DNA of 64,000 bases from Haliotis rubra (taxonomy: Eukaryota): the NCBI RefSeq assembly GCF_003918875.1, contig NW_025767080.1, positions 2,666,001 through 2,730,000 of the forward strand. Direction: 5' to 3'. Below the pieces are notes generated by a model. It had not been told where the DNA came from, ran no database searches, and saw nothing but the letters and a program-made list of their open reading frames with translations. Positions 3,573 to 40,157 of this stretch are shown in pieces; position 1 is the first letter of the stretch; each line of letters starts with the position of its first letter. The position numbers were made by a program, and so were the translations under genes.

Positions 3573-5749
3573 TTATTTCCCTCTGAAAGTAAAGATGTAA
3601 GTGATGAGTGACGTTTTCAATCTTCTTTTACCAGAAATTACACATTGAGTACGGACAGTAATATGGATATTAACGTTTGTATAATGACACGTCTACCCTG
3701 TGCGCAACCACCAGGTGTGCCTCCATATTGTGTCCCTACAATGAAATCTGTTTTAGCAGATAATCGAGACCTAATTACTCTTGCTGGGACTTACTTCGAA
3801 ACTAGCTTCAGCTGATGTGAATGTTAAATGTAAATACAGTATAAATGAAGAGTTTTGTATCTTTTTGTCACCAAGATGAAATAAAAGAAGCATACGAAGC
3901 AAACAAATTGATAGTCTAGTTTAACGTGATACACAGGCAGCCTTAATTTTGGTTGTATTTCTTATGTAAAAGAAACGTAAAACATAATCATTGTTCACTT
4001 TTCCACTTTCGTAAGAGCATCATTGTGTGATGGGCACAAACATGTTCTCCAAATGGTCAATCATGATGCTGAGAATAGTTACTTTCATGCCTGGTCTGGC
4101 CTGTTCATCACGACCAGACGAAGTCAATGAACAATTTAATGGCCATTTAACACACACACACACACACACACACCCCACCCCACCCCACACACCCCACCCC
4201 ACCCCTTTACTTACACGCCAAGTCCAAAACCACGTCCACAAAGACAGTGGGCGTCAAAGCAGTGGCGTTCTGAATGGCTGTCTCTACACTGACAGCTGCC
4301 GCAGTCAAAGCGGGCGGTACAAGCGGCTGAAATATGAACGTCCCTCTTGGTCACCATAGTACATATACAGCTCTCAGTGGTGTGATTCGTGAAGATTCCG
4401 TCGTATGCTGAGCCAATGAAGCCCTACAATTATCCAAACCGCCAGTATCATATCAAGCCACTCATGTTTGCACTTTGGGGACTTGGAGTAGTGACTTCCG
4501 CCGCACTCAGCAATATCCCACCTATATGGCGGCGGTCTGTAGATAATCGAGTCTGGACCAGACAATCCAGTGATCAACAACATGAGCATCGATCTGCGCA
4601 ATTGGGAACCGATGTGTCAACCAAGTCAGCGAGCCTGACCACCCGATCCCGTTAGTCGCCTCTTACGACAAGCATGGGTTACTGAAGATTATTTCTAACC
4701 CGGATCTTCACGGGTTAAGTAAGATCGTTTACTTTGTCTTCTTTGGTGCTTCAATCTGAGTGTGAGGGTTTGAATCTCGGATGTGACTCAACAGCGAAAA
4801 GGTATCAGAATTGTGTACTTTATTCAGAAAGTGTAATTCCATATGTATCACGTTACATTTGATCACTTTCTGAAAAGAATTGTGTTTACTTGTGGTTAGT
4901 TCTCTTTTTTCCTCTTTTTGGTATAGGCGAATCTTTCCTTAATAATACATTCACAGATGAAATTTGACGACTGTAGTAAATTTATGTTGTTGACTCACAT
5001 ACTTGAAAGGCAGGAACCAACATTGGCTGCAACCAGACAGGTGCATTGTCCATGTGAGCAGGCAAGCTTTGAGGAACTGTCACATGTCAGGTGATTACAG
5101 TCACCATCATCTGTACATTGCTCGCTGTAGATCACAGCTGATACAAAGAAAGGAACAACATCCTATCATTTACATTAACTTCAGGGCTGCGTGATCTCTG
5201 TAGCGCTCACGGCTTACTCTTTCAAACAACGTTTGTTGAGAGAGTCAGTCTAGTTTTACGGCGCTTTTAGCAATATTCCAGCAAATCATGGCAGGGACAC
5301 CAGAAATGGGCTTCACATATTGTACTCGTGTGGGGAATCGAACCCATGTCTCAGCGTGACGAGCGAACGCTTTAACCACTGGAATAACCCATCGCCCCCA
5401 CGTTTGTTCAATGGAGTGGATGCATGAGGTTTAACTCAAGTGGGTTTATTGGGCTACGCTCGTATCTCACACTACAGCCCATGAAGAACATGTGGTTTGT
5501 CAGTGGGCAAGTGAGGTGGGTATGGGACTGGGTTTCCGTTAGGGTGAGGTGGGTACGGGACTGGGTTCCCGTTAGGGTGAGGTTCATTCACTCACAGATA
5601 TAAAGCACGGAAAACGAGCAGTACAAATGCATTAATGTTGTATATTATGTTTAAATATTAAATGTCACAAACTAAGATATGAACGTGGTTACTGTCTTCT
5701 ACTCACCAACAGAGGCGCTGACAATGACGAGAAACAGTGTAACTTTCAT
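3573..5749 (-). CDS. Copy B (type 1), cvSI-2-like secreted Cys-rich protein, 99 aa: MKVTLFLVIVSASVAVIYSEQCTDDGDCNHLTCDSSSKLACSHGQCTCLVAANVGSCLSTACTARFDCGSCQCRDSHSERHCFDAHCLCGRGFGLGVGK
   Basis: Exons 5707-5749, 5003-5137, 4215-4326, 3573-3582; all GT-AG and phase-compatible; upstream TATA box; AATAAA at 3519-3524; Cys spacing recalls the cvSI/I84 family (recognition, not a search). Confidence 0.85.
4490..4715 (-). mobile_element. SINE-like repeat with Nin-like core (catgcttgtcgtaagaggcgactaa) in intron 2 of B; copies at ~29430-29660, 36600-36830, 43748-43977, 45378-45624, 46775-47938 (split), 54865-55104, 56660-57070 (split)
   Basis: Multiple dispersed homologous copies in both orientations, several ending in (ACTC)n-type tails. 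Confidence 0.8.
5240..5400 (-). mobile_element. tRNA-derived SINE in intron 1 of B; copies at ~48581-48745 (+) and ~57950-58096 (+)
   Basis: A-box and B-box (GTGGTTAAAGCG...GGTTCGAATCCC) followed by a shared body and short-repeat tail. Confidence 0.8.
5511..5583. repeat. 33-bp minisatellite, ~2.2 units
   Basis: gtgaggtgggta(t/c)gggactgggtt(t/c)ccgttagg repeated. Confidence 0.8.
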
Positions 5750-5800
5750 GTCTGAGAGTTGAGCAAATGCTTTCAGAGTAATGTCTTCATTCGGTTGATC

Positions 5801-5930: not shown

Positions 5931-8288
5931 GATAAAGGACACATGCGGTATGCAGGTAACCTTCCACTATTGACCTCTCGGAGTGCAATCTAGCCATGTG
6001 TATTGTTATTGCATAAATATTATTCTTGAAGATCTAGAAACAGCACAAAGAATTGAATTGGATCTCCAGTTAGGAAGCATCCTCAAGATGACAATAAATA
6101 CACCACTAAAACAACGTTGACTCTTCTACGGAAATAGAATCCGTATGATCAATCCACGCAATAATTACATACACACCAAACGCAACATGTTTCTGTAAAA
6201 CCATATCGATCACGATAACCAATGAGAGAATAATGAAACATTTTATTGTATGGTTCTTCTTCATAGTTCACTGAAAGCAGCAGAATATAATAATTTAGAT
6301 GATTGCTCTTCTTATCATTGACATGTAAAATAAATGACAAGTACACACTCCAAGGTTGAACCCGAGATCACACATTTCAGGCTTTCGTGAATCATTTTTT
6401 TTTACGTCTCACATGAAATTTAAACGTTACAAAATCACTGTGAAATACAGTACATTTCAGTACAGGGTATTGCGTCGGGCATTTGATTATGTCGTTAATT
6501 ACCGGATTATCTGATCTTTTATGTCTTTAGTTACAAAGATTCCGCGTCATATAACAGGCATATCAAAAGTGTTCTGGGACACAATAAAAAGACTATTTTG
6601 TACCTCTGTGCATTGATCTAAAGATGATACTTATGAAGCTGTTTCACTGGTCGCATGTATTTCAAGTGAGTTAATCAGTGGAAGGGAATTGGTTTGGGAC
6701 CCATTATTGGACAATGTCACATCATTGATACACCAGAAGATAATGTAAACAGAGGCGGCACAACCTTTTTCCATATTCATAAGATATCTCTGCTAAAAGC
6801 AGAGTCGATTGTACAATTGCGACCATATCATGAGCATATGCTTGTTTCAGCAGTATTACAGCTGTATGATGTTGTTTGTATTCAGTGATTGTCACCATGC
6901 GATACGATGACAGTGCATGTATTTATGAATCACTATGAAATAATGATGATACCAGATGTTTGCGAAAAGGGGAGCGTACCCTGTCCCACCGGTGGCACCC
7001 GTCATAAACAGACTCCCGTATTTTCAAGCAGCAATGTTGCAGAAATTCATACCAAACAATTACTAGTACCCAGTAAGAAGTGCACATTTGGTTGCCATGG
7101 TGTTGCCAACTTCCTGACCCAACTTTTTATCCAAAAGGTTTCAATTTACCCTGAAATTCAGCATTCACTTAATGTTTTCATTGATATTTGCTTTCAGCTT
7201 GGGCAAATTGCCCTGAACTATAGTCATGGTCATTCATCACCACGTTTGGTTGATCAAGAAATGAAGTCTTTCCTTTGTAAACCTCTATATATTTGGTGCG
7301 TGAAAAAGACATGTTTAAAGTTGTCATCTAGCTAACAGAAATGTATCCCATTTTCAAAGGGATTATCATCGTATTTTACATGTTAGAATATATGTTTTGA
7401 TACCTACTTAATACCTGATTGCGACATAAAAATATTTCTAACTGATAATTTCATTTTGATCCTATTTCAATCCTATTTTAAGTCGAAATGTGTTGATACA
7501 TATGTTAAATTTGGGATTACACTTTCTCAGTAAAGTACCCATTCTAGGAGACAGCGATGGCTCAGTGGGTTAGATGGCTGACTTTGTGTGCTGGCAATTA
7601 GGTGCCTGACGCTGAGAGTATGGGTTTCAGTAGATGGCAGTTGTGTAATCTGAAAGGTTCTTCATCTTTAATTAGAAAGGAAACGCATCAGCACACTTTG
7701 AAACAATTTACTATATTCAGTTGAATGTGCATTTTCATTTAATTTGTTTAACACAAGGATGATACTTCCTACGCGACACATCATGCTCTCTGGACATAAA
7801 TTATGGTAATACTGATTGTCGAACGTTCATGAGGGGGACGTTCCGATCAAGCCCTGGCTTGACCACTGCTATCACAGCTCTACACCTTGACACAAACTCA
7901 GTATGTCTACGGGCCATCATACTCATTTATTCCCTCAGAGGTCGCTGCTGTAGCCAGATTGTGTAGTGAAATGCTATAGTCCCGTAAAACTAGCAAGTAC
8001 AAATCCATATATTGTATCGGGATCGTTGGAGGGTTGGCTACAAACCCGGAATACCCATGGGATATATTCTATAATTGGAAGCATGGAAACCAACACAAAC
8101 GAGTTAACTGTATTTGCAGATTTATTTTACATGTATACATGTATGGATCCACGTGATATGGAGTCTTTCCATGGGGTTTCTCATTTATTTCCCTCTGAAA
8201 GTGAACAGGCAAGTTCCTGTGAGGGGCATAACCATAACAAACATCACATAAGGTATTCATTGACATTTACTACTTAAGATTGTAAGTA

Positions 8289-8478
8289 TTTGGGAGTACA
8301 CTTTCACAATTAAGTACAGATTCTAGTACTTTTGTTGGGTTGCGTTCCATCCGGGATTCGAACCCACACCCTCAGTCAGGCACCTAATCGCCAGCACACA
8401 AAGTCAGCCGCCTAACCCACCCGCGGTGGCAATAAAGGTACTAGAATCTGTATTTTACTGGGAAAATGTAATCCCAAA
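8289..8478. mobile_element. ~190-bp element with ~41-bp TIRs around a tRNA-like head; copies ~24012-24201, 31491-31680, 38666-38855; partial at ~7510-7625 and ~23230-23345
   Basis: tttgggagtacactttc...agattctagtac is inverted at the right end; internal minus-strand B-box GGTTCGAATCCC. Confidence 0.65.
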
Positions 8479-8586
8479 CATGTGTTTCAATTGACCACTT
8501 TCTAAATGGCATTGTGTATTCATAAATGCTTAGTTATTTTGCAATTAATCGTTCCCGTTTGGAGTCAAACGGTCTATAGATGACTT

Positions 8587-8626
<40 letters not shown>

Positions 8627-8652
8627 TAGATAGATAGATAGATAGATAGATA
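8587..8652. repeat. (GATA)n microsatellite in intron 3 of type-2 genes (also ~24306-24360, 31786-31827, 38960-39003)
   Basis: Directly visible. Confidence 0.95.
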
Positions 8653-10573
8653 CTTTCATCCACAAATGACCCGTCCATAATGACGCTATACTTACACCCC
8701 TGGTCCACCAGGTCCCGATGGACCATGTCCACAAAGACAGTGGCCGTCAAAGCAATGACGTTCTTGATGGCTGTCTCTACAATTACAGCTGTCGCAGTCG
8801 GCGCGGGCGGTACATGTGGCTGAAATATGAACGTCCCTCTTGGTCACCACAGTACATATACAGCTCTCAGTGGTGTGATGTGATTAGATAGCTCCTGTCG
8901 TGTGCTTGGTCAATGAATTCCTACAATTATCTAAACCGTCGGTATCAAGCTTGCACAAAAAATGGACTTTTGCGATTTGGAATTGTGACTTCAACATTTG
9001 TTGAAGTCGTGGTGGCTGAGTGAATAGGTCGCTTATCTTGTGCACGTCTTAGGTGCCTCACTCTCTTCCAAACCACTCTCTAAAATCGTGTATACTTGCT
9101 GTCACACCTTTGGCAAAGTTTCTTATTGCAGTGTCTTTCCTAAATAATACCTTCACGGAAGAACTTTGCCGAGTTCAGTTATACAGACCGTTATTTTGTT
9201 AATTGACATACCTGAAAAGCAGGTACCAGCATTGGCTGCAACCAGACAGGTGCATTGTCCATGAGAGCAGGCCAGCTTTGAGGAACTGTCACATGTCACG
9301 TGAGTACAGTCACTATCATCCCTGCACCCCTCGCTGGATATCACCGCTGTATAACAAAAATACCTGGATCCGCCCATGTTGAGTGGCGAGAAAAAAGGAA
9401 TAGAGAACTGTGTTGAGTATACAAACTGAATATTCAAAACCTCAGTGAACCTTTCTGCTTGAGATTGGAGGGTATTTCCAAATTTGACGCCTATCTGACA
9501 AAACTGAAATTTGATGTAATTTCTTTGTAATTGTTTTTACCTGTAGTATGTGTGAACAATTACTGTTTTGCAACGGGTGCCTCCGGTGCGACATGATAGC
9601 GAACACTATTTGACAGTGATTCATAAATACAGGCTCATGACTGTATACCTAATCACTGTAATGTTTGACGGGTAAGATTTTCTTATTGGCTTCGTGATAA
9701 TATTGTTATCTTTGTACATTCTCCTACCATGCGTTGTGTAAGTATGTTCTATCTACATATATTCACTCTGTGCATTGACTGAGCATTCACCTCGTGAAGA
9801 AGCAAGAATTAGCTCGGATTATTTCGTAAAAAGGCTCACGTACAATTAAAAAAATTAAAAACTTGTGTTATTATAAGATAGATGCAATTGACAATCAGAT
9901 TCATATGTATAAATAACGCAATGGCAATGCTTCCTTAACATAATTAGAACAATTTGTTGCTGTTGAAAAATTGCTACATTATAATGTGTTCAAAACATAT
10001 TGCTGATCATTGTAATATGGTAATGCTTTAAAATACAGCGCACGTCATGATAAACTTTACGTTTAAATAGGAAATGAAATTCATTTTCTACAAAAATATC
10101 ATTACAAATATTACAAAGTCTTTGGTGCCTCGGAACTCCATCAAATCTCACACATAAATGTCGTTTGCTGATTTGTTGAGCGCCCTTCTATTATGTTCAA
10201 TGTACCCCGCTTTACAAGCGACTAACATTTCGTAGTAGTAATTTCTTTATCTCGAATAACTTTGAATCACGTATGATGTACGTAAATTGCCGGTGTTTTG
10301 CGAATGCAAATCGATGGAAGGGAGATAATTCTAAATTTGTTTTTCTTGTCGTCTGGTACTCCATACTATGATCCGATACCCATGCTTCAAACAGTTCAAA
10401 ATTACCATTGAGGTGATTGCTCTTTTTTCCACTCACATGCAAAATAGCTGACGCATAAACAGAATGCACAAGGACAAGTGTAATACCCATATCACATGCA
10501 CAGTCAAGTTAATTTCAGGCTTTTATGCAGCCTTTTTGTACTTGTTCTTTTTTTATTAACGTCTCACGTTAAA

Positions 10574-12328
10574 GTATGTCTGAGGAAAAATTGCCGGTAT
10601 AACGATTTTTCCACGCATCTTGCGAATCTCCTCCACTTGGTCTTGAGATAGTTGTCTTTTCAGAGGCATTTTGTTTGTACTATATCTCTGCATTCGCACA
10701 GTTGTCTATATGGAAAACTAGTCAGAACCTAGGCGGACTAGGCACACTAGGCAAATTAGGTACAAACTAGGTGCAAACTTGGTACAAACTAGGTGCGAAC
10801 TAGGCAGAACCTAGGCAAACTAGGTAGAAACTAGTTCTGTGGAATAGGAATCCAACGCCTTGTTTTCCATATAAACAATTGTGCGAATGCAGATATATAG
10901 TACAACACAATGCCTCCGAAAGGACAACTATCGCAAGACCAAGTGGAGGAGATTCGCAAGATGCGTGGAAAAATCTCTGCACAAGAAACAACGATTTGGA
11001 ATCGGTTCCAATCGACTACGCAAAATATGGAATACAGAAGAAGATATGCAGACAGCTACAAAGCACATTTCTTCCTCCCCCGCTACAAATCCGAACTCCA
11101 GCACATCCATATTGCCAACCGCAGAACCGTCTACCAACACCCTCTTGCCCGCTAGCGAGACAGCTCCAAATCCGACTTCTACCTCCAGCACAACCTCGTT
11201 GCCTGCTGCAGATCCGTCGACTGCGCCCACCGTCCAGGACTTCTACGACCGCTTGGGGAGGCTCGAGGCTCGCGTGGAGCAAAACGCGATGATGTTGTCG
11301 GCTCGTGTGGAGCAAACCGCGACGATGTTGTCAGTTCGTGCGGAGCAAACCATGAATTTGTTGGTGGACGTCTTGTGTAGGCAGGACAAGGACGACGATG
11401 ACGAAGAACTACGGGAGAAAATAGAAAGCGTCGAGGAGGAACAAGAAGAGACCCGTCTGGATATCGAGAAGGTGTGGCAGATGGTAGAATCGGCCCAAAG
11501 GTGGACCACCCTTTCACTAGTGTTTCTCTGAATGGTCGTCCACAAGAACTGGAAGCACAGCACACAGGCCCACATACCAGTCGACGAGAAGACAGAAACG
11601 CTCATACCAGTTTCCACGGCCAAACCCGGGGATCCCCACTATATGGAGTAGAGAAGTCGATGTGTGGAAAAAAGTATTGTAGGTATACGAACCTTGAGTT
11701 TGTTTTTTTCGTCCGGGCGCGTGCCCTACTTTCCGTACTACGAATTCCACGAAAAGCAGTTGGAATGCGAAAACGGGCCTCGACAAGTCTACAAATCCAT
11801 TCGTCCTTTGCAACCCCAAGCCCGCGACTGTGCATCTGCAAAAATACTAGACGAGCTGTCGGAGGGTTTGTCTAGAAAACTATACAATTGGGGCAAGACT
11901 AGACTATTTGCTGTCGGCTATGGAAACAGTCTGTGTGGTGCCAGTTTTTTTGCATACCTGTCTTGGTATCGGGTCGAATATGGGGTTTGTGGTTGCTGAA
12001 AAAATGGGTAGCCCTAGCGAAAAGGAGATTCTTATAATAATTCGAGTGCACCTTCGCCGATGGAGAAACAACACGAGAGTGGTCCAAACCCCATCGACAC
12101 ACTGTTGTTGTTTTTCTGCGCTGGACTCAAATTTTGCTTTCCGTATACCTGTCTTGGGGTTGGATGGACTACTGGATCACGAAGAAAAAAACAATGCAAA
12201 CAAAATGTGTTCCTATATACTCAAATGTTGAGGGGAGGTGCACCCTTGGCTTTTTTCCTTCTTATTTTTTCATTATTTTTGCTTTGCGGTCCCGTACCAT
12301 CATTCCCTATACTACTTAAGATGATACA
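10574..12328 (+). mobile_element. GC-rich inserted island with inverted-repeat head and decayed ORFs (possible Polinton/virus-derived fragment)
   Basis: Compositional jump; replaces ~800 nt of flank seen at 6420-7190; arms 10604-10718 and 10862-10975; overlapping long ORFs. Confidence 0.5.
10910..11531 (+). pseudogene. Frameshifted ORF: HTH-like N-terminus, S/T/P-rich linker, coiled coil, hydrophobic end
   Basis: MPPKGQLSQDQVEEIRKMRGKISAQE continues after a frameshift near 10988 as KQRFGIGSNRLRKIW...VQDFYDRLGRLEARVEQ...EELREKIESVEEEQEE. Confidence 0.5.
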
Positions 12329-12611
12329 TGCTTTCATCTTGGGCAAATTGCCCTGAATAACATTCATGGTCATTCACCTCCAAGTTTAGTTGATCAAGAA
12401 ATGAATTGTTTCCTTGATATTTCCTTTGTAATATCTTGAAAAAAGACATGTTCAAATTTGTTATCTAGCTAACAGAAATGTATCCAATTTTCACATGTTA
12501 GAATATAACTACTTAATACCTGATTGCGACATAAAAAAACATTCCAAGTGATAATAAGTTGATACTTCCTTCCAGTTTTCTACTGGAATAAAGTAACTGT
12601 GCATTATTTAG

Positions 12612-13176: not shown

Positions 13177-13299
13177 ACATGATTTTGTGGTGCTTGCCTT
13201 AATCATTGTGTAACTGTTGACTTGATAATATTGAAATCTGTATGTTTTGACACTAGGCATCGGGACACACCCTTGAAAAGATGTGGTCTCAAATGTCAG

Positions 13300-13660: not shown

Positions 13661-13661
13661 C

Positions 13662-16328: not shown

Positions 16329-17601
16329 CAGGTTTCCAAACCTGGCATTCTCGGGGACGAACGTCTTACCGCGCTTATGGCCGTTTGAGATTCTGTTGTC
16401 AAACATCAGACCTCTCTCACGATTAGAGTGAGCCACGTTGTTGTCAAACTCCAGGATGGGTGTGTGTCTGGTCTGGAACTTTGTGACAGCTGGCTGGTTG
16501 TTGGCCAACTTCTCTGCTTGACGAGCAGCTGATGGTCCGAGTGGGAGCATTTCGTGTGGAATCGCTTCCACCCTGTGAGATTTAAAGTAATCTAGCCCAT
16601 TTGAACCCTTATTATGGCATGTGTAGACATGTATAATTATATACATATGGTTCACATTTGCGCAGTTGACGACATTCTCTGTTTGCACATTAGTATGAAT
16701 CATAGTAGACTCGAAATATTGCACAAGGACTTCCAAACACATTTTCCCCTCTCTCTTACTAACAGCGTCAATTCAATTCGTGAGGAATTGACAGGTGGGC
16801 AAACACGTAGATCCAAGCAACCCATGCCATCCATGCTGAGACCTTACACAGATTATGGTGTTTGTATCACAATTCAAAGTCACAATTAAACGGAACCTCC
16901 CTCTAGTATTAATAGCGTCAATTACCTCGAGGGGATTTGGCAGGTGTGCAAGAACGGGGGGTGTGCGCTGATAAACAGGACATAACTTTCACTTGGGTTT
17001 AATGATGGGGTGGAATAGTACGGGGTGGCATAGAAAGGCGTTTAATAGGACGGGATGGGATCACAGGCCCTCGTGTCTTTGCGAGGATTAAATATTTTTA
17101 AAAATGAGATGACCCCCGACTCGAAATGCTACACAGTACAATACTGGATGGGATAGGATAGGGTTGCTCTGGATAGGATGCAAGGTCCAGGTGGTTTAGA
17201 GAGGTGTACACACGGATGACCTTGCGACGCGAAGGGGCGGGGTGATATAGAGGGGAAGGACGGGACTGCTTGGAACTGGATGGTACTGAGCCTTCCGACC
17301 AGTACATGTTATCACAGCTCTACACCTCCTTGGCACGGACTGATAAAGTTTACGGACCACATTCATGAATTTCACCAAGGGTAGCTAGTTTGTTTAGTGA
17401 ATACAATAGTCATGTAAAACTAGCAAGATCCATATATTATCTCGTGCTTTTATGAGGATAGGCTATAAACCCGGAATAAGTGTAAGATATATCCCACAGA
17501 CTGAAGCGTGTAAACCAACATCAAAACAAACCATTTAGTTGTATCAAAAATTTATTTTACACATGTATAAGGTATGAATTCTTTCCAAGAGAGTCTCTCC
17601 T

Positions 17602-20600
17602 TTATTTTCCGCTGAAAGTAAAAAGTAAGTGATGAGAGACAATATGAAATTTCTTTTGCCAGAAATTGAGCATTCAGTAAAAACTGTAATATGGAGCAAT
17701 TAACTTTTGTAAAATGACAATCCTACCCTATCCGCAAACACCAGGTGTCAATTACCTATTTATATCATGTGCCTGTATTATATTTTATCCCTCCAATGAA
17801 ATCTGTTTCGACAGATAATCGAGACCTAATTACATTTGCTGAGATTTACTTTGGAACACCAAGACATAGCTGATGCGAACGTAAAAATGTGAATACAGGC
17901 TTAAAGACACTATGTCACACATTTTCGACTATATTTTGGCCTGTATTATACATATGGGGCATATGCACTCACTTTAGCTTCCTATTGATGCAATAAAAGA
18001 TGTATTATCCCTTACGACTTGCTGATAAGTGAAACTTCGAGGCGAATACCTTCCAAACAGATAACACTTGCCATATAGGGAATGTAAACAGTTGCTCTGT
18101 ACATCGAAAACTGTCGCACGCGGTTTTGTTGTGTATGCCCAACTGGTTTCTGTGTCCAAAGGAGCTATAGGATATTCGTAGAGAGCGCTCCAAGGGGACA
18201 TAACTCTTTAGGGTTCGCTTGAAATAATGTTCGGCCGGTAGAGGGTGTTGCATTATTCATTCGAACTTTTTAATTTAATATTGTAATCTAATACGTATTT
18301 TTTTCAAAACATAAATTATATTGTAGCTTCCCTGAGGGCTGATAGTATTATTGAGAGAAATGCATTATTTATTTTCTAGAGAAGCGTGGTGTGCATAGTG
18401 CCTTTAATGAAGAGTTTTGCATTTAAAGTGATACACAGAAAGAAATTGTTTTGATTGTATTTATCATGTCAAGGAAACGTAAAACGTAATCGTTGTTCAC
18501 TTTTATACTGTCGTAAAAGTATCAGTGTGTGATAGGCACAAACATGTTCTCCAACTGGTCTAAGTGACCCGTCAATCATGACGCTGAGCACAGTTACTTT
18601 CATGCCTGATCTGCCGTGTCCACCACGACCAAATGAAATCAGTGAACAATTTATTAATGGCCATTGCTCAAAAAGGAAGGACACTCCCCTTTACTTACAC
18701 GCCAGGTCCAAACCCATGTCCACAAAGACAGTGGCCGTCGAAGCAATGACGTTCTGCATGGCTGTCTCTACACTGACAGCTGTCGCAGTCGGCGCGGGCG
18801 GTACATGTGGCTGAAATATGAACGTCCCTCTTAATTTGAGCACCACAAATGACACATAGATTCTGTCGTACGCTTGGTCAGTGATTCCCTGCAAACCGTT
18901 AAGTTCATGTCAAGCCACCGAAGTTTCCACAAAAATGGACTTAGCAAATTGGAATATTGACTTTCATTTTTATTAAAGCCTCGGTTGCTGAGTGAGAAAG
19001 TCGATTACTTTAGGGCCTCAATCTGAATGTGTGGGTTCAAGTGTGACACAACACAAAAACTAAAATTTTGAAGTTTACTAAGAAAGTGTAATTATCACAT
19101 TACATTTCATCACTTGCTGAAAGGCAGTGTGTATACTTGTGGTCATTCTGTTTGCCTCTTTCTGGTATAGGCGAATCTTACGTGAATAATACGCTGATGA
19201 ATGAAAATTGCCGATTGTAGTTATTAAGACTGTTATTTTGTTAATTGGCATACCTGAAAAGCAGGAACCAGCATTAGCTGCAACCAGACAGGTGCATAGT
19301 CCATGAGAGCAGGCAAGTCTCGAGGAACTGTCACAGGTCACGTGAGTACAGTCACTATCATCCCTACAGGACTCGCTGTAGATCACAGCTGGTGTAAAGA
19401 AAGAAACCACATGTCATTAACAACTGGTACACGTGCTCCTCTGTGGAGGTCACGACTCAGACATTTCAGCAACATTTGTAGAAGCGAGTAAGTTGATGGA
19501 TGAGCATGTTTGGCAAGTACAAGTTCAAACTATATACCCCACTTCCGGTCTCATTGCCATGGTTTCGAATGTTTAAAGGGTAGGTGCATTGGCTGATACA
19601 CCAACACATTTTATCAAAAAGAGAGTTTTACTTTTACAAACGGATTATAACAGGCACAGTACACGAGTGTTTCCATACTAATCAATCTGAAGATATATAC
19701 TGGTACAAACTATGGACTGAAATATATCCCACTCCAACTCACGTTCTCCAATTGAGCTTCCATGAACAGTTCAAATAACATTGTTCAGTGGAATTGTAGA
19801 GGACTGAAGAATAATTTCTATGATTTGAAGTTACTAAAGTTACAATATTTTAGGCCAACGGCATTTTGTTTGCAGCAAACATATCTTAAAGACACAGATC
19901 TTATTTACAGAAGACAAAATGAATTATATAACTTCTTTCTTCCTGCAGGACCTAGAGCTACTGGAGGATCTTCAATTTTGATGAGACAGAATGTTATACA
20001 TACATGTAGCAGTATTCCCTTATAAAAATACATGTCGTCAAGCTGTTGCTATCCGACTTTGGGGTAATCCACTTTGGGATAGTTCTGATACAATCAGAAA
20101 TGGGAAGACACTAGACGGTTATATTTCTAACAACGATCTGTGTATCTTTAATGATAATTCGAAAACATATTCACATCCCGGTACAGGTACATGCCCTTGC
20201 CTAGATTTATCTCTCTCACACAGATCTGTTGATTGAATTTCAGTGGTCAGTCCACAACGACCTTTGTGGCAGGAATCATTGTCCGACCATTCTTCAAGCA
20301 ATAACTCCAGCTGATGTGTGTTCCTCCATCATCAAGATGGAAATATCTACATTACGTTCTAATGAATTAAATGCTGACTATAACCTGTGTTTTTCATCAT
20401 CTTTTTAAATAACTATATTTCACCACTTGGAATAAGAATACAATCCGCTATTTCTGCAGCTAACATCGATCTTGAAAATACAGCCCTAACCCACCTTTTC
20501 TCTTCTCCACCGTGGCAATTGGTAACGCTAGAGGTGGAGGTGACGTAAAATGTTCACTCACTCACAGATATATAGCACGGAAAACGAGCAGTACAAATAC

Positions 20601-20719
20601 ACTAACATTGTATATTACTTTTAAATATTAAATCTCACTAACTAAAATATGGTCTCAGTTACTGTCTTCTACCCACCAACAGAGACACTGACAATGACGA
20701 GAAACAGTGTAGCTTTCAT
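17602..20719 (-). CDS. Copy D (type 1), 99 aa: MKATLFLVIVSVSVAVIYSESCRDDSDCTHVTCDSSSRLACSHGLCTCLVAANAGSCFSATCTARADCDSCQCRDSHAERHCFDGHCLCGHGFGPGVGK
   Basis: Exons 20677-20719 (donor GTGGGT), 19254-19388, 18699-18810, 17602-17611; TATA 20771-20780; AATAAA 17551-17556. Confidence 0.85.
17905..18403. mobile_element. TTAA-targeting MITE (Kolobok-like) in intron 3 of D
   Basis: TTAA on both sides, TIR ag(a/g)cactatg(t)cacac; absent at the paralogous site near 3840 in B. Confidence 0.75.
19775..20520 (+). mobile_element. Degenerate LINE (I/Nimb-like) APE endonuclease fragment, antisense within intron 1 of D
   Basis: IVQWNCRGL, CLQQTYLK, NPLW, FNDNSKTYSHPGTGT..LDLSL, HNDLCG motifs. Confidence 0.75.
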
Positions 20720-23700: not shown

Positions 23701-23895
23701 CTAGCAAATACAGATCCATATATTGTATCGGGATCGTTTGAGGGTTGGCTACAAACCCGGAATACCCATGGAATATATTCCGTAATTGGAAGCATGGAAA
23801 CCAACACAAACGAGTTAACTGTTTTAGCAGATTTATTTTACATGTATATATGTATGGATCCACATAATATCGAGTCTTTCCATGGGGTTTCTTCT

Positions 23896-25440
23896 TTATT
23901 TCCCTCTGAAAGTAAACAGGTAGGTTCCAGTGATGGGTATGCAATAACAAACATCAGATAAGGTATTCATTCACATTTACTACTTTGGATTGTGAGTTAA
24001 CACATGTTATATTTGGGAGTACACTTTCTCAATTAAGTACAGATTCTAGTACTTCTGTTGGGTTGCGTTCTATCCGGGATTCTAACCCACACCCTCAGTC
24101 AGGCACCTAATCGCCAGCACACAAAGTCAGCTGCCTAACCCATCCGCTGTGGCAATAAAGGTACTAGAATCTGTAATTTACGGTGAAAATGTAATACCAA
24201 ACATAATACGTGTTTCAATTGACCACTTTCTTAATGGCATTGTGTATTCATAATGTTTTAATTATTTTGCAATTAATCGTTCCAGTTCAGAGACAAACGG
24301 TGACCGATAGATAGACAGACAGACAGACAGACAGATAGATAGATAGATAGATAGATAGATCACGCTACTAGTTACTTACACGCCTGGTCCACCAGGTCCA
24401 GTTGGACCATGTCCACAAAGACAGTGGCCGTCAAAACAGTGACGTTCGTCGTGGCTGTCTCTACAATTACAGCTGTCGCAGTCGGCGCGGGCGGTACATG
24501 TGGCTGAAATATGAACGTCCCTCTTGGTCACCACAGTACATATACAGCTCTCAGTGGTGTGACGTGATTAGATAGCTCCTGTCGTGTGCTTGGTCAATGA
24601 ATCCCTACAATTATCTAAACCGTCGGTATCAAGCTTGCACAAAAATGGACTTTTGCGATTTGGAATTGTGACTTTCACATTTGTTGAAGTCGTGGTGGCT
24701 GAGTGAATAGATCGCTTATCTTGTGCACGTCTTAGGTGCCTCACTCTGTTCCAAACCACTCTCTATAACCGTGTATACTTGTTGTCGCACCTTTGGCAAC
24801 GTTTGTTATTGCAGTGTCTTTCCTAAATAATACCTTCACGGAAGAACTTTGCCGAATACAGTTATAGACGTTAGTTAATTATACAGACCGTTATCAACTT
24901 GAAAGGCAGTGTGTTAATTGACATACTGACGAATGAAAATTGCCGATTGTAGTTATTAAGACTGTTATTTTGTTAATTGGCATACCTGAAAAGCAGGAAC
25001 CAGGATTGGCTGCAACCAGACAGGTGCATTGTCCATGAGAGCAGGCAAGCCTTGAGGAACTGTCACATGTCACGTGAGTACAGTCACTATCATCCCTGCA
25101 CCCCTGGCTGGATATCACCGCTGTATAACAAAAATATATACCATTTCATTAAAATTCGGGCTACCCGATGTACAGGGCACAGGTCACACTTTTGTTGAAT
25201 GTAGCAAGTGGATGGATGAGCATATTTTGCAGGTTTGACTCCAGAGGGTTTCAGACTTCGGTCTCTCACATATCCAGCTTTGAAAAGTGCCATTGCAACA
25301 CAAATTATGTATAGGTGCTGTTTTATATCATTTAAATACTAAAACCTAATATCTAAAATCATGAATGTCGTTACTATCTTCTACTCAAAACCAATAACAG
25401 AGCTGAACAGAGCAATGACGAGAAATAGTGTAAGTTTCAT
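23896..25440 (-). CDS. Copy E (type 2), cvSI-2-like; exon 1 has a 6-nt insertion and a degraded donor (G|GTTTTGAG); possible pseudogene or assembly error
   Basis: Exons 25392-25440 (MKLTLFLVIALFSSVI), 24986-25120, 24380-24503 (...DSHDERHCFDGHCLCGHGPTGPGGPGV), 23896-23905; TATA 25493-25502; AATAAA 23832-23837. Confidence 0.65.
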
Positions 25441-26867: not shown

Positions 26868-26870
26868 TAT

Positions 26871-30445: not shown

Positions 30446-31374
30446 TAATACTTTACTGACATGCTTCACAAGAGACTCATCACACGCGAAAACGTAGACA
30501 ATAGAATTCTGTCATAATTGGTACATCAAATCTACTGAGGGAAGGAGACAGGTTGGTACTATTTTCTGACACGATTCTTCGTGTGAGGGTTTTAATACCC
30601 TAATTGTCTTGTTTCCTCGAATCAACAATGTCAGCAAATAAGAAAGGACAAATATAGCATTGGTACCAATGGCTTTGACTTTGATACGTGGTCTGCAGTA
30701 TGTTGGACCTATTCAACCGTGAATTTGCATCATGAGCTACCAAGACCATATTCTCCGCATGTATGAAAAACGCATAACTGATATTTTATAATATATGAAA
30801 CTGACGATTGTTCTTCAGATTTGAAATATTGCTGAACATACAGCGAAACGTTTTGACTGACAAGTACGGCAAAAAACATAATGTGAACGGGTACGGTGCT
30901 GACATTCCTAAATCTGATATTCGTTCCCAAGAATAGCATTCTGATACGCCAAAAAGGGACACAACTCTGCATAGGGAATTAGAGCGTCTAAGACACCTCA
31001 TCGTATCTCAAATCGTGTAGCTAGGTTGTGAGGTTCAGGCTCACATTGTACATGTTTCTCCATAGAATCATCATCTTTGACACAAATTCAATAAGTCTAC
31101 GAACCACCATATTCCTTTATTCCATCAAGTGTCACGACTGTCACTAGACTGTGTAGTGAAAAGCAATAGTCACGTAAAACTAGCAAATACAGATCCATAT
31201 ATTGTATCGGGATCGTTTGAGGGTTGGCTACAAACCCGGAATACCCATGGAATATATTCCGTAATTGGAAGCATGGAAACCAACACAAACGAGTTAACTG
31301 TTTTAGCAGATTTATTTTACATGTATATATGTATGGATCCACATAATATCGAGTCTTTCCATGGGGTTTCTTCT

Positions 31375-32983
31375 TTATTTCCCTCTGAAAGTAAACAGGT
31401 AGGTTCCAGTGATGGGTATGCAATAACAAACATCAGATAAGGTATTCATTCACATTTACTACTTTGGATTGTGAGTTAACACATGTTATATTTGGGAGTA
31501 CACTTTCTCAATTAAGTACAGATTCTAGTACTTCTGTTGGGTTGCGTTCTATCCGGGATTCTAACCCACACCCTCAGTCAGGCACCTAATCGCCAGCACA
31601 CAAAGTCAGCTGCCTAACCCATCCGCTGTGGCAATAAAGGTACTAGAATCTGTAATTTACGGTGAAAATGTAATACCAAACATAATACGTGTTTCAATTG
31701 ACCACTTTCTTAATGGCATTGTGTATTCATAATGTTTTAATTATTTTGCAATTAATCGTTCCAGTTCAGAGACAAACGGTGACCGATAGATAGACAGATA
31801 GACAGACAGATAGATAGATAGAATAGATCACGCTACTAGCTACTTACACGCCTGGTCCACCAGGTCCAGTTGGACCACGTCCACAAAGACAGTGGCCGTC
31901 AAAACAGTGACGTTCGTCGTGGCTGTCTCTACAACCACAGCTGTCGCAGTCGGCGCGGGCGGTACATGTGGCTGAAATATGAACGTCCCTCTTGGTCACC
32001 ACAGTACATATACGGCTCTCAGTGGTGTGATGTGATTAGATAGCTCCTGGCGTATGCTTGCTCAATGAATCCCTACAATTATCTAAACCGTCGGTATCAA
32101 GCTTGCACAAACATGGACTTTTGCGATTTGGAATTGTGACTTTCACATTTGTTGAAGTCGTGGTGGCTGAGTGAATAGATCGCTTACCTTGTGCACGTCT
32201 TAGGTGCCTCACTCTGTTCCAAACCACTCTCTATAGCCGTGTATACTTGTTGTCGCACCTTTGGCAACGTTTGTTATTGCAGTGTCTTTCCTAAATAATA
32301 CCTTCACGGAAGAACTTTGCCGAATACAGTTATACAGACGTTATTTGGTTAATTGACATACCTGAAAAGTTTACTAAGAAAGTGTAATTATCACATTACA
32401 TTTCATCACCTGCTGAAAGGCAGTGTGTATACTTGTGGTCATTCTGTTTGCCTCTTTCTGGTATAGGCGAATCTTACGTGAATAATACGCTGACGAATGA
32501 AAATTGCCGATTGTTAGTTATTAAGACTGTTATTTTGTTAATTGGCATACCTGAAAAGCAGGTACCAGGATTGGCTGCAACCAGACAGGTGCATTGTCCA
32601 TGAGAGCAGGCAAGCCTTGAGGAACTGTCACATGTCACGTGAGTACAGTCACTATCATCCCTGCACGCCTGGCTGGATATCACCGCTGTATAACAAAAAT
32701 ATATACCATTTCATTAAAATTCGGGCTACCCGATGTACAGGGCACAGGTCACACTTTTGTTGAATGTAGCAAGTGGATGGATGAGCATATTTTGCAGGTT
32801 TGACTCCAGAGGGTTTCAGACTTCTCTCACATATCCAGCTTTGAAAAGGAGCAACACAAATTATGTATAGCTGTTTTATATCATTTAAATACTAAAACCT
32901 AATATCTAAAATATGAATGTCGTTACTATCTTCTACTCACCAATAACAGAGCTGACAATGACGAGAAATAGTGTAAGTTTCAT
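31375..32983 (-). CDS. Copy F (type 2), 103 aa: MKLTLFLVIVSSVIAVISSQACRDDSDCTHVTCDSSSRLACSHGQCTCLVAANPGTCFSATCTARADCDSCGCRDSHDERHCFDGHCLCGRGPTGPGGPGVGK
   Basis: Exons 32941-32983, 32551-32685, 31848-31971, 31375-31384; TATA 33036-33045; AATAAA 31311-31316. Confidence 0.85.
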
Positions 32984-35900: not shown

Positions 35901-38549
35901 GTTTCATCGTGAATCATTCTTTGTTTGTATAGATTCATATATAAAGTACTTGGCTATAGCTCGATATATGTGTCACCATTTGCCTGTTGTCTTAATTTGC
36001 TAATTTGTTAACAATCTGGATATAGATTATAATTTGTCATCTTACATGCAAATACTTTGACGAAATGGGAAACACAATGCTGCAGTCTTCTTACAAGTAC
36101 AATGGGCCAAAGGCTATGAATATACAAGTAGGAAAATTAAGTCGCAAATATTCAAGTAAACAATCTGTGGAGAGGTCAATCAATGGCTGTCAAGTTTCAA
36201 TACTGTTTCCTCTTATATATAAGAATAAACACCGTAGATGGGATGAAACATTACAAATTCAAAAAGATTGTCTTTTCTGTCTTCTTTTTGTTAATACCCC
36301 AAAAGCGTTACGACATTTAAACCCTCTCCAATATTACTGCTGTGTGTTTTAAAAGGTGGAGTTTTTCAGACATTTCAACCCACGTGGTTCCTGGATATAG
36401 GTCAGCACCTATACGGCACTGTGATCACAATGTGCTGATTCTACAGCGTAAACAGCGTGAAAAACGTGTTGAGATCATTTCAGCTGTTTATCGGTATTCC
36501 AGGCCATACGGACTTGCTGTGGCCAGATCGTGATTTGGGTGCTTTGGACTAGTTTTTGTGAAATGTCGGGATTGTTGTCATTTCATTACAGATATACACG
36601 ACCCGCTAAGATCGGGGTTAAAACTGAGCAAGCATGAGAACTGAGCAACCTATGCTTGTCGTAAGAGGCGACTAACGGGATGGACAGGTTCGCTGACCTG
36701 GTTGACGCATGTCATCGCATCGCAGTTCGAAGCTCATGGTGTAATTCCCTGGCTTGTCTGGTCCAGATTATTTACCGGTGCCATATAGCTGGGATATTGC
36801 TACGTTCGGCATTAAACAATAAACAAACAACAGATGTAAAGATGTTTGGAAGGGAATTTTCAGGGTTGACGTTCTCTATTACTTCAATCACTATAAAATG
36901 TCAAGCTTAATCCGACATGCTGTGACGGGTCGGCTTCTGTGTAAACAGAATATCGAAATATAATTTACACAAGAACTTAATTAAGCACCCCTGTACATTT
37001 GCAATGATATGTTTTCAACACGTACATAAAACTTCTCGTGGTGCCCACGATTGAGTGTTTCTGACCCGTATGATCCTTTGAAAAAACGACAAAATGATTG
37101 TAATCCATGTTGATTTNNNNNNNNNNNNNNNNNNNNNNNNNNNNNNNNNNNNNNNNNNNNNNNNNNNNNNNNNNNNNNNNNNNNNNNNNNNNNNNNNNNN
37201 NNNNNNNNNNNNNNNNNNNNNNNNNNNNNNNNNNNNNNNNNNNNNNNNNNNNNNNNNNNNNNNNNNNNNNCTGGAATGTTTAATGGTGAATTTATTGGTG
37301 AATGTAAACAAGTCATTCAAAATGTCATTTTGCGTGTCTTACACGATTCAAGGTCAATACCGAGTGCAACCTCCTTGTGACTGTATGACAGTCAGCACTC
37401 TCCCCTCATACCCCCATCATGTCAACCTCCTGATCCTCTGAAGGGGCAGTCTACGCCATTCCTCGTGTAAAGCAGCATCCAGTTAGGCCAAGTTCTGTAC
37501 AGGAGGATCCCTTTGTTAAAGACGACGCCCAATCATGTCCCAGATGTGCTCCAAAGGGTTTAGATCGGGACTCATTCAATCGTGAGATATGTCAGGGGGT
37601 GCTTAACTAAGTTCTTTGTGTAATACTTTACTGACATGCTTCACAAGAGACTCATCACACGCGAAAACGTAGACAATAGAATTCTGTCATAATTGGTACA
37701 TCAAATCTACTGAGGGAAGGAGAGAGGTTGGTACTATTTTCTGACACGATTCTTCGTGTGAGGGTTTTAATACCCTAATTGTCTTGTTTCCTCGAATCAA
37801 CAATGTCAGCAAATAAGAAAGGACAAATATAGCATTGGTACCAATGGCTTTGACTTTGATACGTGGTCTGCAGTATGTTGGACCTATTCAACCGTGAATT
37901 TGCATCATGAGCTACCAAGACCATATTCTCCGCATGTATGAAAACGCATAACTGATATTTTATAATATATGAAACTGACGATTGTTCTTCAGATTTGAAA
38001 TATTGCTGAACATACAGCGAAACGTTTTGACTGACAAGTACGGCAAAAAACATAATGTGAACGGGTACGGTGCTGACATTCCTAAATCTGATATTCGTTC
38101 CCAAGAATAGCATTCTGATACGCCAAAAAGGGACACAACTCTGCATAGGGAATTAGAGCGTCTAAGACACCCTCATCGTATCTCAAATCGTGTAGCTAGG
38201 TTGTGAGGTTCAGGCTCACATTGTACATGTTTCTCCATAGAATCATCATCTTTGACACAAATTCAATAAGTCTACGAACCACCATATTCCTTTATTCCAT
38301 CAAGTGTCACGACTGTCACTAGACTGTGTAGTGAAAAGCAATAGTCACGTAAAACTAGCAAATACAGATCCATATATTGTATCGGGATCGTTTGAGGGTT
38401 GGCTACAAACCCGGAATACCCATGGAATATATTCCGTAATTGGAAGCATGGAAACCAACACAAACGAGTTAACTGTTTTAGCAGATTTATTTTACATGTA
38501 TATATGTATGGATCCACATAATATCGAGTCTTTCCATGGGGTTTCTTCT

Positions 38550-40157
38550 TTATTTCCCTCTGAAAGTAAACAGGTAGGTTCCAGTGATGGGTATGCAATA
38601 ACAAACATCAGATAAGGTATTCATTCACATTTACTACTTTGGATTGTGAGTTAACACATGTTATATTTGGGAGTACACTTTCTCAATTAAGTACAGATTC
38701 TAGTACTTCTGTTGGGTTGCGTTCTATCCGGGATTCTAACCCACACCCTCAGTCAGGCACCTAATCGCCAGCACACAAAGTCAGCTGCCTAACCCATCCG
38801 CTGTGGCAATAAAGGTACTAGAATCTGTAATTTACGGTGAAAATGTAATACCAAACATAATACGTGTTTCAATTGACCACTTTCTTAATGGCATTGTGTA
38901 TTCATAATGTTTTAATTATTTTGCAATTAATCGTTCCAGTTCAGAGACAAACGGTGACCGATAGATAGACAGATAGACAGACAGATAGATAGATAGAATA
39001 GATCACGCTACTAGCTACTTACACGCCTGGTCCACCAGGTCCAGTTGGACCACGTCCACAAAGACAGTGGCCGTCAAAACAGTGACGTTCGTCGTGGCTG
39101 TCTCTACAACCACAGCTGTCGCAGTCGGCGCGGGCGGTACATGTGGCTGAAATATGAACGTCCCTCTTGGTCACCACAGTACATATACGGCTCTCAGTGG
39201 TGTGATGTGATTAGATAGCTCCTGGCGTATGCTTGCTCAATGAATCCCTACAATTATCTAAACCGTCGGTATCAAGCTTGCACAAACATGGACTTTTGCG
39301 ATTTGGAATTGTGACTTTCACATTTGTTGAAGTCGTGGTGGCTGAGTGAATAGATCGCTTACCTTGTGCACGTCTTAGGTGCCTCACTCTGTTCCAAACC
39401 ACTCTCTATAGCCGTGTATACTTGTTGTCGCACCTTTGGCAACGTTTGTTATTGCAGTGTCTTTCCTAAATAATACCTTCACGGAAGAACTTTGCCGAAT
39501 ACAGTTATACAGACGTTATTTGGTTAATTGACATACCTGAAAAGTTTACTAAGAAAGTGTAATTATCACATTACATTTCATCAACTGCTGAAAGGCAGTG
39601 TGTATACTTGTGGTCATTCTGTTTGCCTCTTTCTGGTATAGGCGAATCTTACGTGAATAATACGCTGACGAATGAAAATTGCCGATTGTAGTTATTAAGA
39701 CTGTTATTTTGTTAATTGGCATACCTGAAAAGCAGGAACCAGGATTGGCTGCAACCAGACAGGTGCATTGTCCATGAGAGCAGGCAAGCCTTGAGGAACT
39801 GTCACATGTCACGTGAGTACAGTCACTATCATCCCTGCACGCCTGGCTGGATATCACCGCTGTATAACAAAAATATATACCATTTCATTAAAATTCGGGC
39901 TACCCGATGTACAGGGCACAGGTCACACTTTTGTTGAATGTAGCAAGTGGATGGATGAGCATATTTTGCAGGTTTGACTCCAGAGGGTTTCAGACTTCTC
40001 TCACATATCCAGCTTTGAAAAGGAGCAACACAAATTATGTATAGCTGTTTTATATCATTTAAATACTAAAACCTAATATCTAAAATATGAATGTCGTTAC
40101 TATCTTCTACTCACCAATAACAGAGCTGACAATGACGAGAAATAGTGTAAGTTTCAT
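38550..40157 (-). CDS. Copy G (type 2), 103 aa; same as F except GSCFS for GTCFS
   Basis: Exons 40115-40157, 39725-39859, 39023-39146, 38550-38559; TATA 40210-40219; AATAAA 38486-38491. Confidence 0.85.

What the first reader, a model, noticed from the sequence alone, without database searches (positions are those of the whole stretch)
3573..39146. Hidden 10-nt terminal exon adds a GK amidation signal; the stop codon inside the donor allows an amidated/non-amidated switch
Seen: in all six copies with a 3' end, exon 3 reads GT|GTAAGTA, so the apparent Val-stop (GTG TAA) overlaps a perfect 5' splice site. About 0.46-1.1 kb downstream each has ACTTTCAG|A GGG AAA TAA, then AATAAA and a GT-rich tract. 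Copy D has C GGA AAA TAA instead, two synonymous changes that still give V-G-K-stop, which suggests selection. Established: a C-terminal Gly-Lys is trimmed by carboxypeptidase E and amidated by PAM. Inference: spliced mRNA gives a Val-amide terminus, while retaining intron 3 gives the same chain ending in free Val.
Basis: partly seen in the sequence, partly recalled or inferred. Interest (0 to 1): 0.8.

Follow-up and report, generated by a model that had tools for sequence, protein, structure and literature searches.

The report
Abalone protease-inhibitor genes ending in Gly-Lys micro-exon
Six tandem blacklip-abalone genes for small cysteine-rich (family I84) protease inhibitors do end in a tiny last exon that adds Gly-Lys, a likely amidation signal. 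Public annotation already has that exon, and the proposed amidated/non-amidated "switch" has no support.

Summary
All six minus-strand copies end exon 3 with GT|GTAAGT. After 463-1087 nt each has TTTCAG|(A/C)GG(G/A)AAATAA, then AATAAA and a GT-rich tract. The N gaps lie in intergenic spacers, outside every gene.

The genes are Haliotis rubra "serine protease inhibitor Cvsi-2-like" genes of MEROPS family I84. My conceptual splicing of copies A, C, D, E and F reproduces five RefSeq proteins exactly, terminal VGK included. The exon is therefore real but not hidden.

In H. rubra, H. asinina, H. rufescens and H. cracherodii the 10 coding bases vary only at silent positions (GGG/GGA/GGC, AAA/AAG, TAA/TAG/TGA). 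Dreissena relatives end in GGGK or GGRK; the GGGK gene (P0011), the only one whose DNA was read, encodes it with no intron. This supports selection on a C-terminal Gly-basic end. Val-amide (Phe-amide in H. rufescens and H. cracherodii) is the most likely product, but it is untested.

The switch idea is weak:
- Any phase-2 intron with a GTRAGT donor automatically reads TAA or TGA in frame.
- The splice sites are strong.
- No RefSeq isoform ends in free Val.
- In H. rufescens, retaining the intron would change the last residue from Phe to Leu.

No RNA runs were available. The scan had not noted this elsewhere.

The parts
3519..5749 (-). Copy A, complete 4-exon gene (ATG 5749 to AATAAA 3519-3524). 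Exon 1 is 5707-5749, exon 2 is 5003-5137, exon 3 is 4215-4326.
   Evidence: The spliced product is identical to P0020 (XP_046579912.1, H. rubra Cvsi-2-like isoform X1).
3573..3582 (-). Copy A terminal-exon coding part, A GGG AAA TAA. It completes Val, then Gly-Lys-stop. The acceptor is TTTCAG at 3583-3588.
3583..4214 (-). Copy A intron 3 (632 nt, phase 2). The donor is GT|GTAAGT, so the unspliced frame reads GTG TAA.
8121..9346 (-). Copy B. Exon 2 is 9212-9346, exon 3 is 8696-8819, terminal coding part is 8185-8194, AATAAA is 8121-8126. No exon 1 was found.
17551..20719 (-). Exon 1 is 20677-20719, exon 2 is 19254-19388, exon 3 is 18699-18810, AATAAA is 17551-17556.
   Evidence: The product is identical to P0022 (XP_046579907.1).
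17602..17611 (-). Copy C terminal coding part, C GGA AAA TAA. It still gives Val-Gly-Lys-stop. The same variant sits in the H. asinina gene for P0025, at the same place.
23832..25440 (-). Copy D. Exon 1 is 25392-25440 with an unusual GTTTTG donor, exon 2 is 24986-25120, exon 3 is 24380-24503, terminal coding part is 23896-23905, AATAAA is 23832-23837.
   Evidence: The product is identical to P0028 (XP_046579901.1/02.1).
31311..32983 (-). Copy E. Exon 1 is 32941-32983, exon 2 is 32551-32685, exon 3 is 31848-31971, terminal coding part is 31375-31384, AATAAA is 31311-31316.
   Evidence: The product is identical to P0029 (XP_046579906.1).
38486..40157 (-). Copy F. Exon 1 is 40115-40157, exon 2 is 39725-39859, exon 3 is 39023-39146, terminal coding part is 38550-38559, AATAAA is 38486-38491.
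   Evidence: The product is identical to P0019 (XP_046579932.1).
540..582 (-). Exon 1 of a seventh copy (MKVTLFIVIVSAVI...). Its later exons lie beyond the start of the window.

Best explanation
The window is a tandem array in the blacklip abalone (Haliotis rubra) of genes for secreted family-I84 serine protease inhibitors, named 'Cvsi-2-like' in RefSeq. The precursors are about 99-105 aa.

Gene layout:
- Exon 1 encodes most of the signal peptide.
- Exon 2 encodes the first cysteine module.
- Exon 3 encodes the second module plus a Gly/Pro-rich tail.
- A third intron, in phase 2, splits the final Val codon.
- A short terminal exon supplies the last base of Val, then Gly-Lys-stop, about 50 nt of 3'UTR and the poly(A) signal.

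This last exon is the normal, constitutive end of the gene and is already in RefSeq. The Gly-Lys end is kept by purifying selection. It most likely acts as a processing signal: a carboxypeptidase removes Lys, and peptidylglycine alpha-amidating monooxygenase converts Val-Gly to Val-NH2 on a flexible, exposed tail. In the H. rufescens lineage the product would be Phe-NH2.

The stop codon inside the donor is a by-product of intron phase plus a consensus donor, not a built-in switch. Any unspliced mRNA would simply yield a minor form ending in free Val.

Shown: the exon structure, the identity to RefSeq models, family membership and the silent-only variation. Inferred: that splicing is constitutive, and the amidation itself.
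For: Exon structure and splice motifs in all six copies.

Spliced products of A, C, D, E and F are identical to H. rubra RefSeq proteins ending in GVGK.

All 16 intact Haliotis models that were read (12 H. rubra, 4 H. asinina) end GVGK, and the frameshifted P0001 model still ends in GK. The three H. rufescens and H. cracherodii models end GFGK.

In H. rufescens and H. cracherodii the last exon reads C GGA AAG TGA after a TT|GTAAGT donor. In a further H. rubra copy it reads A GGC AAA TAG. In H. asinina it reads A GGG AAA TAA and C GGA AAA TAA.

Every difference is silent or stop-to-stop. Only 9 of 30 possible single changes are silent. That gives p of about 0.008 for the 4 changes among intact genes and about 7e-4 for 6 changes when two decaying copies are included.

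The 3'UTR directly after the stop differs freely.

The Dreissena relative P0011 ends GGGK and encodes it in exon 3 with no intron. Its relative P0004 ends GGRK, but its DNA could not be fetched.

Similarity between the two intron types in the window begins only about 25 nt before the AG and runs on through AATAAA.

The AlphaFold model puts the last 11 residues below pLDDT 50, consistent with a flexible tail.

Family membership: 39% identity to oyster cvSI-3 at pairwise E 4e-18, a fit to the published I84 cysteine array (PMC9198434), and two phase-1 introns as in bivalves.

From my own knowledge: -Val-Gly is the classic substrate of the amidating enzyme, gastropods have the enzyme, and many mollusc peptides end in -Gly-Lys or -Gly-Arg before amidation.
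Against: No RNA reads, cDNA or mass-spectrometry data were available. Splicing rests on RefSeq models and on conservation.

Amidation of an ~80-residue (78-82 aa), probably seven-disulfide protease inhibitor would be unusual.

The tissue of expression and its co-expression with the amidating enzyme and a carboxypeptidase are unknown.

Oyster family members (the cvSI-3 cluster) end in TRI or TRF with no Gly-basic end, so the feature is not needed for the family's basic function.

The I84 paper I could read never mentions amidation.

Selection on Gly-Lys could serve another purpose.
Confidence: 0.6

Rival explanations
1. The terminal exon is real and constitutive, but Gly-Lys is not an amidation signal. 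The mature inhibitor keeps ...GVGK, or loses only Lys. The conserved basic C-terminus then serves another role, such as charge, binding, or a substrate-like tail for a basic-specific carboxypeptidase.
For: The exon and the selection evidence are the same as for the best explanation. No direct evidence of amidation exists. The I84 literature that was read does not mention it. The top Foldseek row is a carboxypeptidase inhibitor, but at E 1.5, so it is not significant.
Against: X-Gly-Lys-stop or X-Gly-Arg-Lys-stop on a secreted protein is the textbook amidation signal. It recurs in distant relatives (Haliotis VGK and FGK, Dreissena GGGK and GGRK). The conserved residue is the Gly, not only the basic one.
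Confidence: 0.3
2. One reading: regulated retention of intron 3 uses the in-donor stop codon to produce a non-amidated proteoform alongside the amidated one, as a selected mechanism.
For: In H. rubra and H. asinina the unspliced frame reads Val-stop, giving the same chain without GK. A retained last intron would not trigger nonsense-mediated decay (general knowledge). ATTAAA or AATAAA hexamers occur inside some of the introns.
Against: The in-frame TAA or TGA is automatic for a phase-2 GTRAGT donor. The donors match GTAAGT fully and the acceptors have long pyrimidine tracts. Intronic poly(A)-like hexamers are not conserved in position and copy B has none. All members of the four RefSeq clusters that were listed end in VGK. 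In H. rufescens and H. cracherodii, retention would give Leu-stop in place of Phe-Gly-Lys.
Confidence: 0.08
3. There is no functional last exon. The protein ends at Val with TAA, the downstream motif is conserved only because the copies duplicated recently, and the RefSeq models are over-predictions.
For: D, E and F are 98-100% identical units, so their agreement carries no weight. No RNA reads were seen here.
Against: The same phase-2 split with X-Gly-Lys-stop is present in paralogues only about 51% identical in protein, and in four species, with silent-only differences and unalignable flanks. The only conserved AATAAA lies 34-67 nt after the acceptor. From my own knowledge, multiple RefSeq isoforms at these loci imply transcript support.
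Confidence: 0.04

Closest known systems
MEROPS family I84 serine protease inhibitors (oyster cvSI-1, -2, -3; razor clam scSI-1 to -14; abalone hdhSI-1, -2)
   Same: Both have a signal peptide and a small secreted two-module cysteine-rich protein. Both have the CX5CX4CX7CX4CTC...CX4CXC array, with module 1 in exon 2 and module 2 in exon 3. Both have two phase-1 introns and sit in tandem clusters. Copy F is 39% identical to cvSI-3.
   Different: The abalone genes have 14 cysteines rather than 12, a Gly/Pro-rich tail, a third (phase-2) intron and a fourth exon that supplies Gly-Lys-stop. All 14 razor clam genes have three exons. Oyster cvSI-3 has no Gly-basic end.
C-terminal amidation signals of secreted mollusc peptides (conotoxins, neuropeptides, some antimicrobial peptides ending -Gly, -Gly-Lys or -Gly-Arg)
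   Same: A secreted precursor that ends X-Gly-Lys-stop, with a hydrophobic X (Val or Phe) on an exposed tail.
   Different: Here the carrier is an ~80-residue, disulfide-rich protease inhibitor rather than a short peptide, and processing has not been shown. This comparison rests on my own knowledge, not on a tool.
RefSeq gene models of Haliotis rubra (XP_046579901-932), H. asinina, H. rufescens and H. cracherodii 'serine protease inhibitor Cvsi-2-like'
   Same: The proteins are identical to those predicted here, including the terminal VGK. The exon is therefore already in public annotation.
   Different: The annotation carries no note on amidation or on the split Val codon. It merges neighbouring copies into loci with chimeric 'isoforms'.

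Membership tests
MEROPS I84 protease inhibitors | N-terminal signal peptide and a small secreted mature chain (about 70-90 aa) | tested here: met
   The hydrophobic N-terminus MKxTLFLVIV... is modelled as a helix over residues 3-16. The mature chain is about 78-82 aa. No dedicated signal-peptide predictor was available.
MEROPS I84 protease inhibitors | Twelve conserved cysteines in the published array CX5-8CX4-5CX7-9CX4CTCX6-23CX5-7CX3-6CX5-8CX4CXC | tested here: met
   All five complete window proteins match the array as a regular expression (array from PMC9198434). They carry two extra cysteines, 14 in total.
MEROPS I84 protease inhibitors | Sequence similarity to characterised members | tested here: met
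   Copy F against C. virginica SI-3 gives 39% identity over 92 aa at pairwise E 4e-18. An exon-2 profile found the cvSI-3 cluster at E 7.8e-4 in 1.8 billion proteins.
MEROPS I84 protease inhibitors | Gene structure: exon 1 for the signal peptide, exon 2 for module 1, exon 3 for module 2, and two phase-1 introns | tested here: met
   The abalone genes add a third intron and a fourth exon.
MEROPS I84 protease inhibitors | Inhibition of subtilisin-type serine proteases | not testable with these tools
   This needs recombinant or purified protein and an enzyme assay.
C-terminally alpha-amidated secreted peptides | Precursor ends X-Gly followed by basic residue(s) and stop, on a protein of the secretory pathway | tested here: met
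   VGK-stop in all six copies. FGK, GGGK and GGRK in relatives.
C-terminally alpha-amidated secreted peptides | Mature product carries a C-terminal amide, and the amidating enzyme and a carboxypeptidase are present in the secreting cell | not testable with these tools
   This needs mass spectrometry and expression data. No RNA runs were found.
Regulated intron-retention switch | Measurable, regulated retention of intron 3, with weak or regulated splice sites and a conserved alternative product | tested here: not met
   The sequence features do not fit: consensus donors and acceptors, no retained-intron isoform in RefSeq, and an alternative product that is not conserved in H. rufescens. Retention levels themselves could not be measured.

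The most novel reading that the evidence does not exclude
Abalone I84 protease inhibitors, and perhaps those of Dreissena, are made as C-terminally amidated proteins. The efficiency of splicing the last intron, whose donor carries the alternative stop codon, sets the ratio of amidated to free-acid inhibitor in different tissues or during infection. That would be a post-translational modification controlled at the level of splicing.
Probability: 0.08. Interest if true: 0.65.

Novelty: new variant of a known kind. Interest (0 to 1): 0.3.

Why it matters
Family I84 inhibitors are thought to be mollusc-specific immune effectors against pathogen proteases such as perkinsin in oysters. If the abalone members are amidated, that would be a new modification for this family. 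It could change their stability or potency, which matters for anyone who expresses them recombinantly or studies disease resistance in abalone.

The case also teaches a general point. A stop codon 'hidden' in a splice donor is automatic for phase-2 introns and should not be read as a switch. As it stands, the exon is already annotated and the amidation is only a well-supported prediction.

Tried and rejected
- Pfam scan of the exon-2 and exon-3 peptides: nothing significant, only a weak late-nodulin row at E 0.011, below the cut-off.
- Word search with the exon-2 peptide: no candidates, because the length filter excludes the full-length proteins.
- ESM Atlas by features: no score above 0.79, so leads only.
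- The look-up of sequencing runs for RNA: no RNA holder. The three runs found are genomic DNA contigs about 4% diverged from the window. Laying them showed repeats and intergenic coverage but no exon 3 to exon 4 joint, so they say nothing about splicing.
- The look-up of encoding contigs: only genome contigs carry these proteins, no transcript contigs. P0004 and P0007 are not on record.
- Foldseek against the PDB with a moderate model (mean pLDDT 66): no match at E 0.001 or better.
- Paper searches for the peptide sequences, 'Cvsi-2-like' with Haliotis, and hdhSI: nothing on the abalone exon or on amidation.
- Perlinhibin lead. Perlinhibin is a 41-aa Cys/His/Arg-rich nacre miniprotein of H. 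laevigata, and the abalone second module from its first Cys to Val is also 41 aa with 8 Cys. This could not be tested because the paper and the sequence are not held.
- A full-length spliced protein was not typed into any search. The exons were searched by reference, and the full-length RefSeq hits were used afterwards.
Full report
**What is in the sequence.** Reading copy A in full and locating the homologous exons by BLAST gives a four-exon gene:
- A TATA box and exon 1 (ATG, 43 nt, most of a signal peptide). Its donor is GTGAGT and the intron is in phase 1.
- Exon 2 (135 nt), followed by a second phase-1 intron.
- Exon 3 (112 or 124 nt), which ends GGC GT|GTAAGT.
- Intron 3, 463-1087 nt, in phase 2.
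- A terminal exon that begins TTTCAG|A GGG AAA TAA. AATAAA follows 45-58 nt after the stop, and then a GT-rich tract.

Spliced, every copy ends Val-Gly-Lys-stop. Unspliced, every copy reads Val-stop.

**Gaps and independence.** The N runs at 29951-30094 and 37117-37270 lie about 1.2 kb beyond the poly(A) signals of copies E and F. No gene span contains an N, so the gaps do not touch the finding. The six copies are not independent. E and F are 99.3-100% identical over a 7.2-kb unit and D is about 98% identical to E. Copy B has no recognisable exon 1. A seventh exon 1 sits at 540-582.

**What the genes are.**
- Pfam and the word search gave nothing.
- A profile of the six exon-2 peptides, run against 1.8 billion representatives, found seven proteins.
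- Cluster look-ups named the mollusc ones among them 'serine protease inhibitor Cvsi-2-like', from Haliotis rubra, H. rufescens, H. cracherodii, Dreissena and Crassostrea. The Crassostrea cluster contains C. virginica SI-3.
- A search with the H. rubra hit returned RefSeq proteins identical to my spliced predictions:
  - copy A = XP_046579912.1
  - copy C = XP_046579907.1
  - copy D = XP_046579901.1/02.1
  - copy E = XP_046579906.1
  - copy F = XP_046579932.1
- The window is therefore H. rubra contig QXJH01000040.1. The 'hidden' exon is already in public annotation.
- Copy F is 39% identical to cvSI-3 at pairwise E 4e-18.
- The proteins fit the published I84 cysteine array and add two extra cysteines (PMC9198434).
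- They share the two phase-1 introns and the one-module-per-exon layout described for bivalve I84 genes.
- The razor clam genes all have three exons. The fourth exon is therefore a feature of the abalone genes. Other gastropods could not be checked.

**Is the Gly-Lys end selected?** I fetched the loci of relatives.
- H. rufescens (two genes) and H. cracherodii: exon 3 ends GGA TT|GTAAGT and the last exon reads C GGA AAG TGA, giving Phe-Gly-Lys-stop.
- H. asinina: A GGG AAA TAA in one gene, and C GGA AAA TAA in the gene for P0025 (GHGFGPGVGK tail, like copy C).
- Two decaying copies: a frameshifted H. rubra copy has A GGC AAA TAG. A stop-containing H. asinina copy has A GGG AAG TAG.

All variation is silent or stop-to-stop, while only 9 of 30 possible single changes are silent. 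Four silent changes among intact genes give p of about 0.008. Six changes, counting the decaying copies, give about 7e-4. The 12 bases after the stop differ freely between the same genes.

Within the window, similarity between the A/C-type and B/D/E/F-type introns begins only about 25 nt before the AG. The Dreissena relative P0011 ends GGGK and encodes this in exon 3 with no intron. Its relative P0004 ends GGRK, but its locus was not on record. Oyster cvSI-3 has no such end. The C-terminal Gly-basic motif is thus a conserved coding feature of part of the family, and it does not depend on the intron.

**How it most likely works.** The sequence shows a secreted inhibitor whose last 11 residues are modelled as disordered (pLDDT below 50) and end -Val-Gly-Lys. 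From established knowledge (my own, not a tool), a carboxypeptidase of the secretory pathway removes C-terminal Lys. Peptidylglycine alpha-amidating monooxygenase then converts X-Gly to X-amide. -Val-Gly is its classic test substrate. Gastropods have the enzyme, and many mollusc peptides end in Gly-Lys or Gly-Arg before amidation. Val-NH2 (Phe-NH2 in the H. rufescens lineage) is therefore the most likely mature end. This step is inference only. I put it at roughly even-to-good odds, and the reality of the exon itself above 0.9.

**The switch.** For any phase-2 intron the frame reads NN|G and then the donor's positions +2 to +4. With GTAAGT or GTGAGT that codon is TAA or TGA. The in-donor stop follows from intron phase and a consensus donor, and it appears equally as TAA and as TGA in the relatives. 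Other points also count against a selected switch:
- The donors match GTAAGT fully and the acceptors have long pyrimidine tracts.
- Intron GC content (0.37-0.39) is like that of the surroundings.
- Poly(A)-like hexamers inside the intron are not conserved, and copy B has none.
- Every member of the four RefSeq clusters that were listed ends in VGK.
- In H. rufescens and H. cracherodii, retention would end the chain in Leu rather than Phe.

Some unspliced mRNA would still be translatable to a free-Val form, so a minor by-product cannot be excluded. Its level could not be measured. The run search found no RNA library, and the three runs it found are genomic contigs of a relative about 4% diverged.

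**Novelty and verdict.** The family, its tandem expansion and the exon itself are known or annotated. Three things are not in the literature I could search:
- the abalone-type four-exon structure;
- the split Val codon;
- the conserved X-Gly-Lys end as a probable amidation signal of an I84 inhibitor.

This is a modest new variant of a known kind. The scan had not noted this gene family elsewhere.

Noticed in passing
window 540-582 and 3519-40157; RefSeq XP_046579906-08 and XP_046579912-13: RefSeq seems to merge neighbouring tandem copies into one locus with chimeric 'isoforms'. XP_046579908 (P0021) has the exon-1 peptide of copies E/F joined to exons 2-4 of copy C. XP_046579913 (P0030) has copy A's exon-1 peptide joined to exons of a copy outside the window. 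This points either to read-through splicing between copies or to mis-assigned reads.
   Followed up: partly
window 9350-17550: Copy B has no detectable exon 1. The 8-kb spacer up to copy C holds large inverted repeats (13662-14045 against 15929-16328, 90-95% complementary) that look like a transposon with terminal inverted repeats. It also holds the smaller palindrome at 10604-10975 that another note flagged.
   Followed up: partly
window 28800-43200: Units E and F (period about 7.17 kb) are 99.3-100% identical, and each has an assembly gap at the same relative place. This is either a very recent duplication or an assembly duplication of one unit.
   Followed up: partly
window 25392-25440: Exon 1 of copy D has a 6-nt insertion in the signal peptide and an unusual GTTTTG donor. 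RefSeq still models it as a 105-aa protein.
   Followed up: no
L001 7060-7200 (H. rubra, same contig); L007 about 14500-14600 (H. asinina): Two family copies look decayed. One has a frameshift in exon 3: RefSeq XP_046579921 reads on in the wrong frame and still ends in GK by using a shifted donor. The other has an in-frame stop. Both keep the Gly-Lys-stop micro-exon.
   Followed up: partly
window 4450-4850, 5250-5450, 7450-7650, 8250-8650: The introns and spacers contain very high-copy tRNA-derived SINE-like elements. Contig depth there runs into the millions in the related DNA runs.
   Followed up: no
exon 3 products of all copies: The second cysteine module of the abalone proteins (8 Cys; 41 aa from its first Cys to Val in copies A and C) recalls the reported size and composition of perlinhibin, a nacre miniprotein of H. 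laevigata.
   Followed up: no
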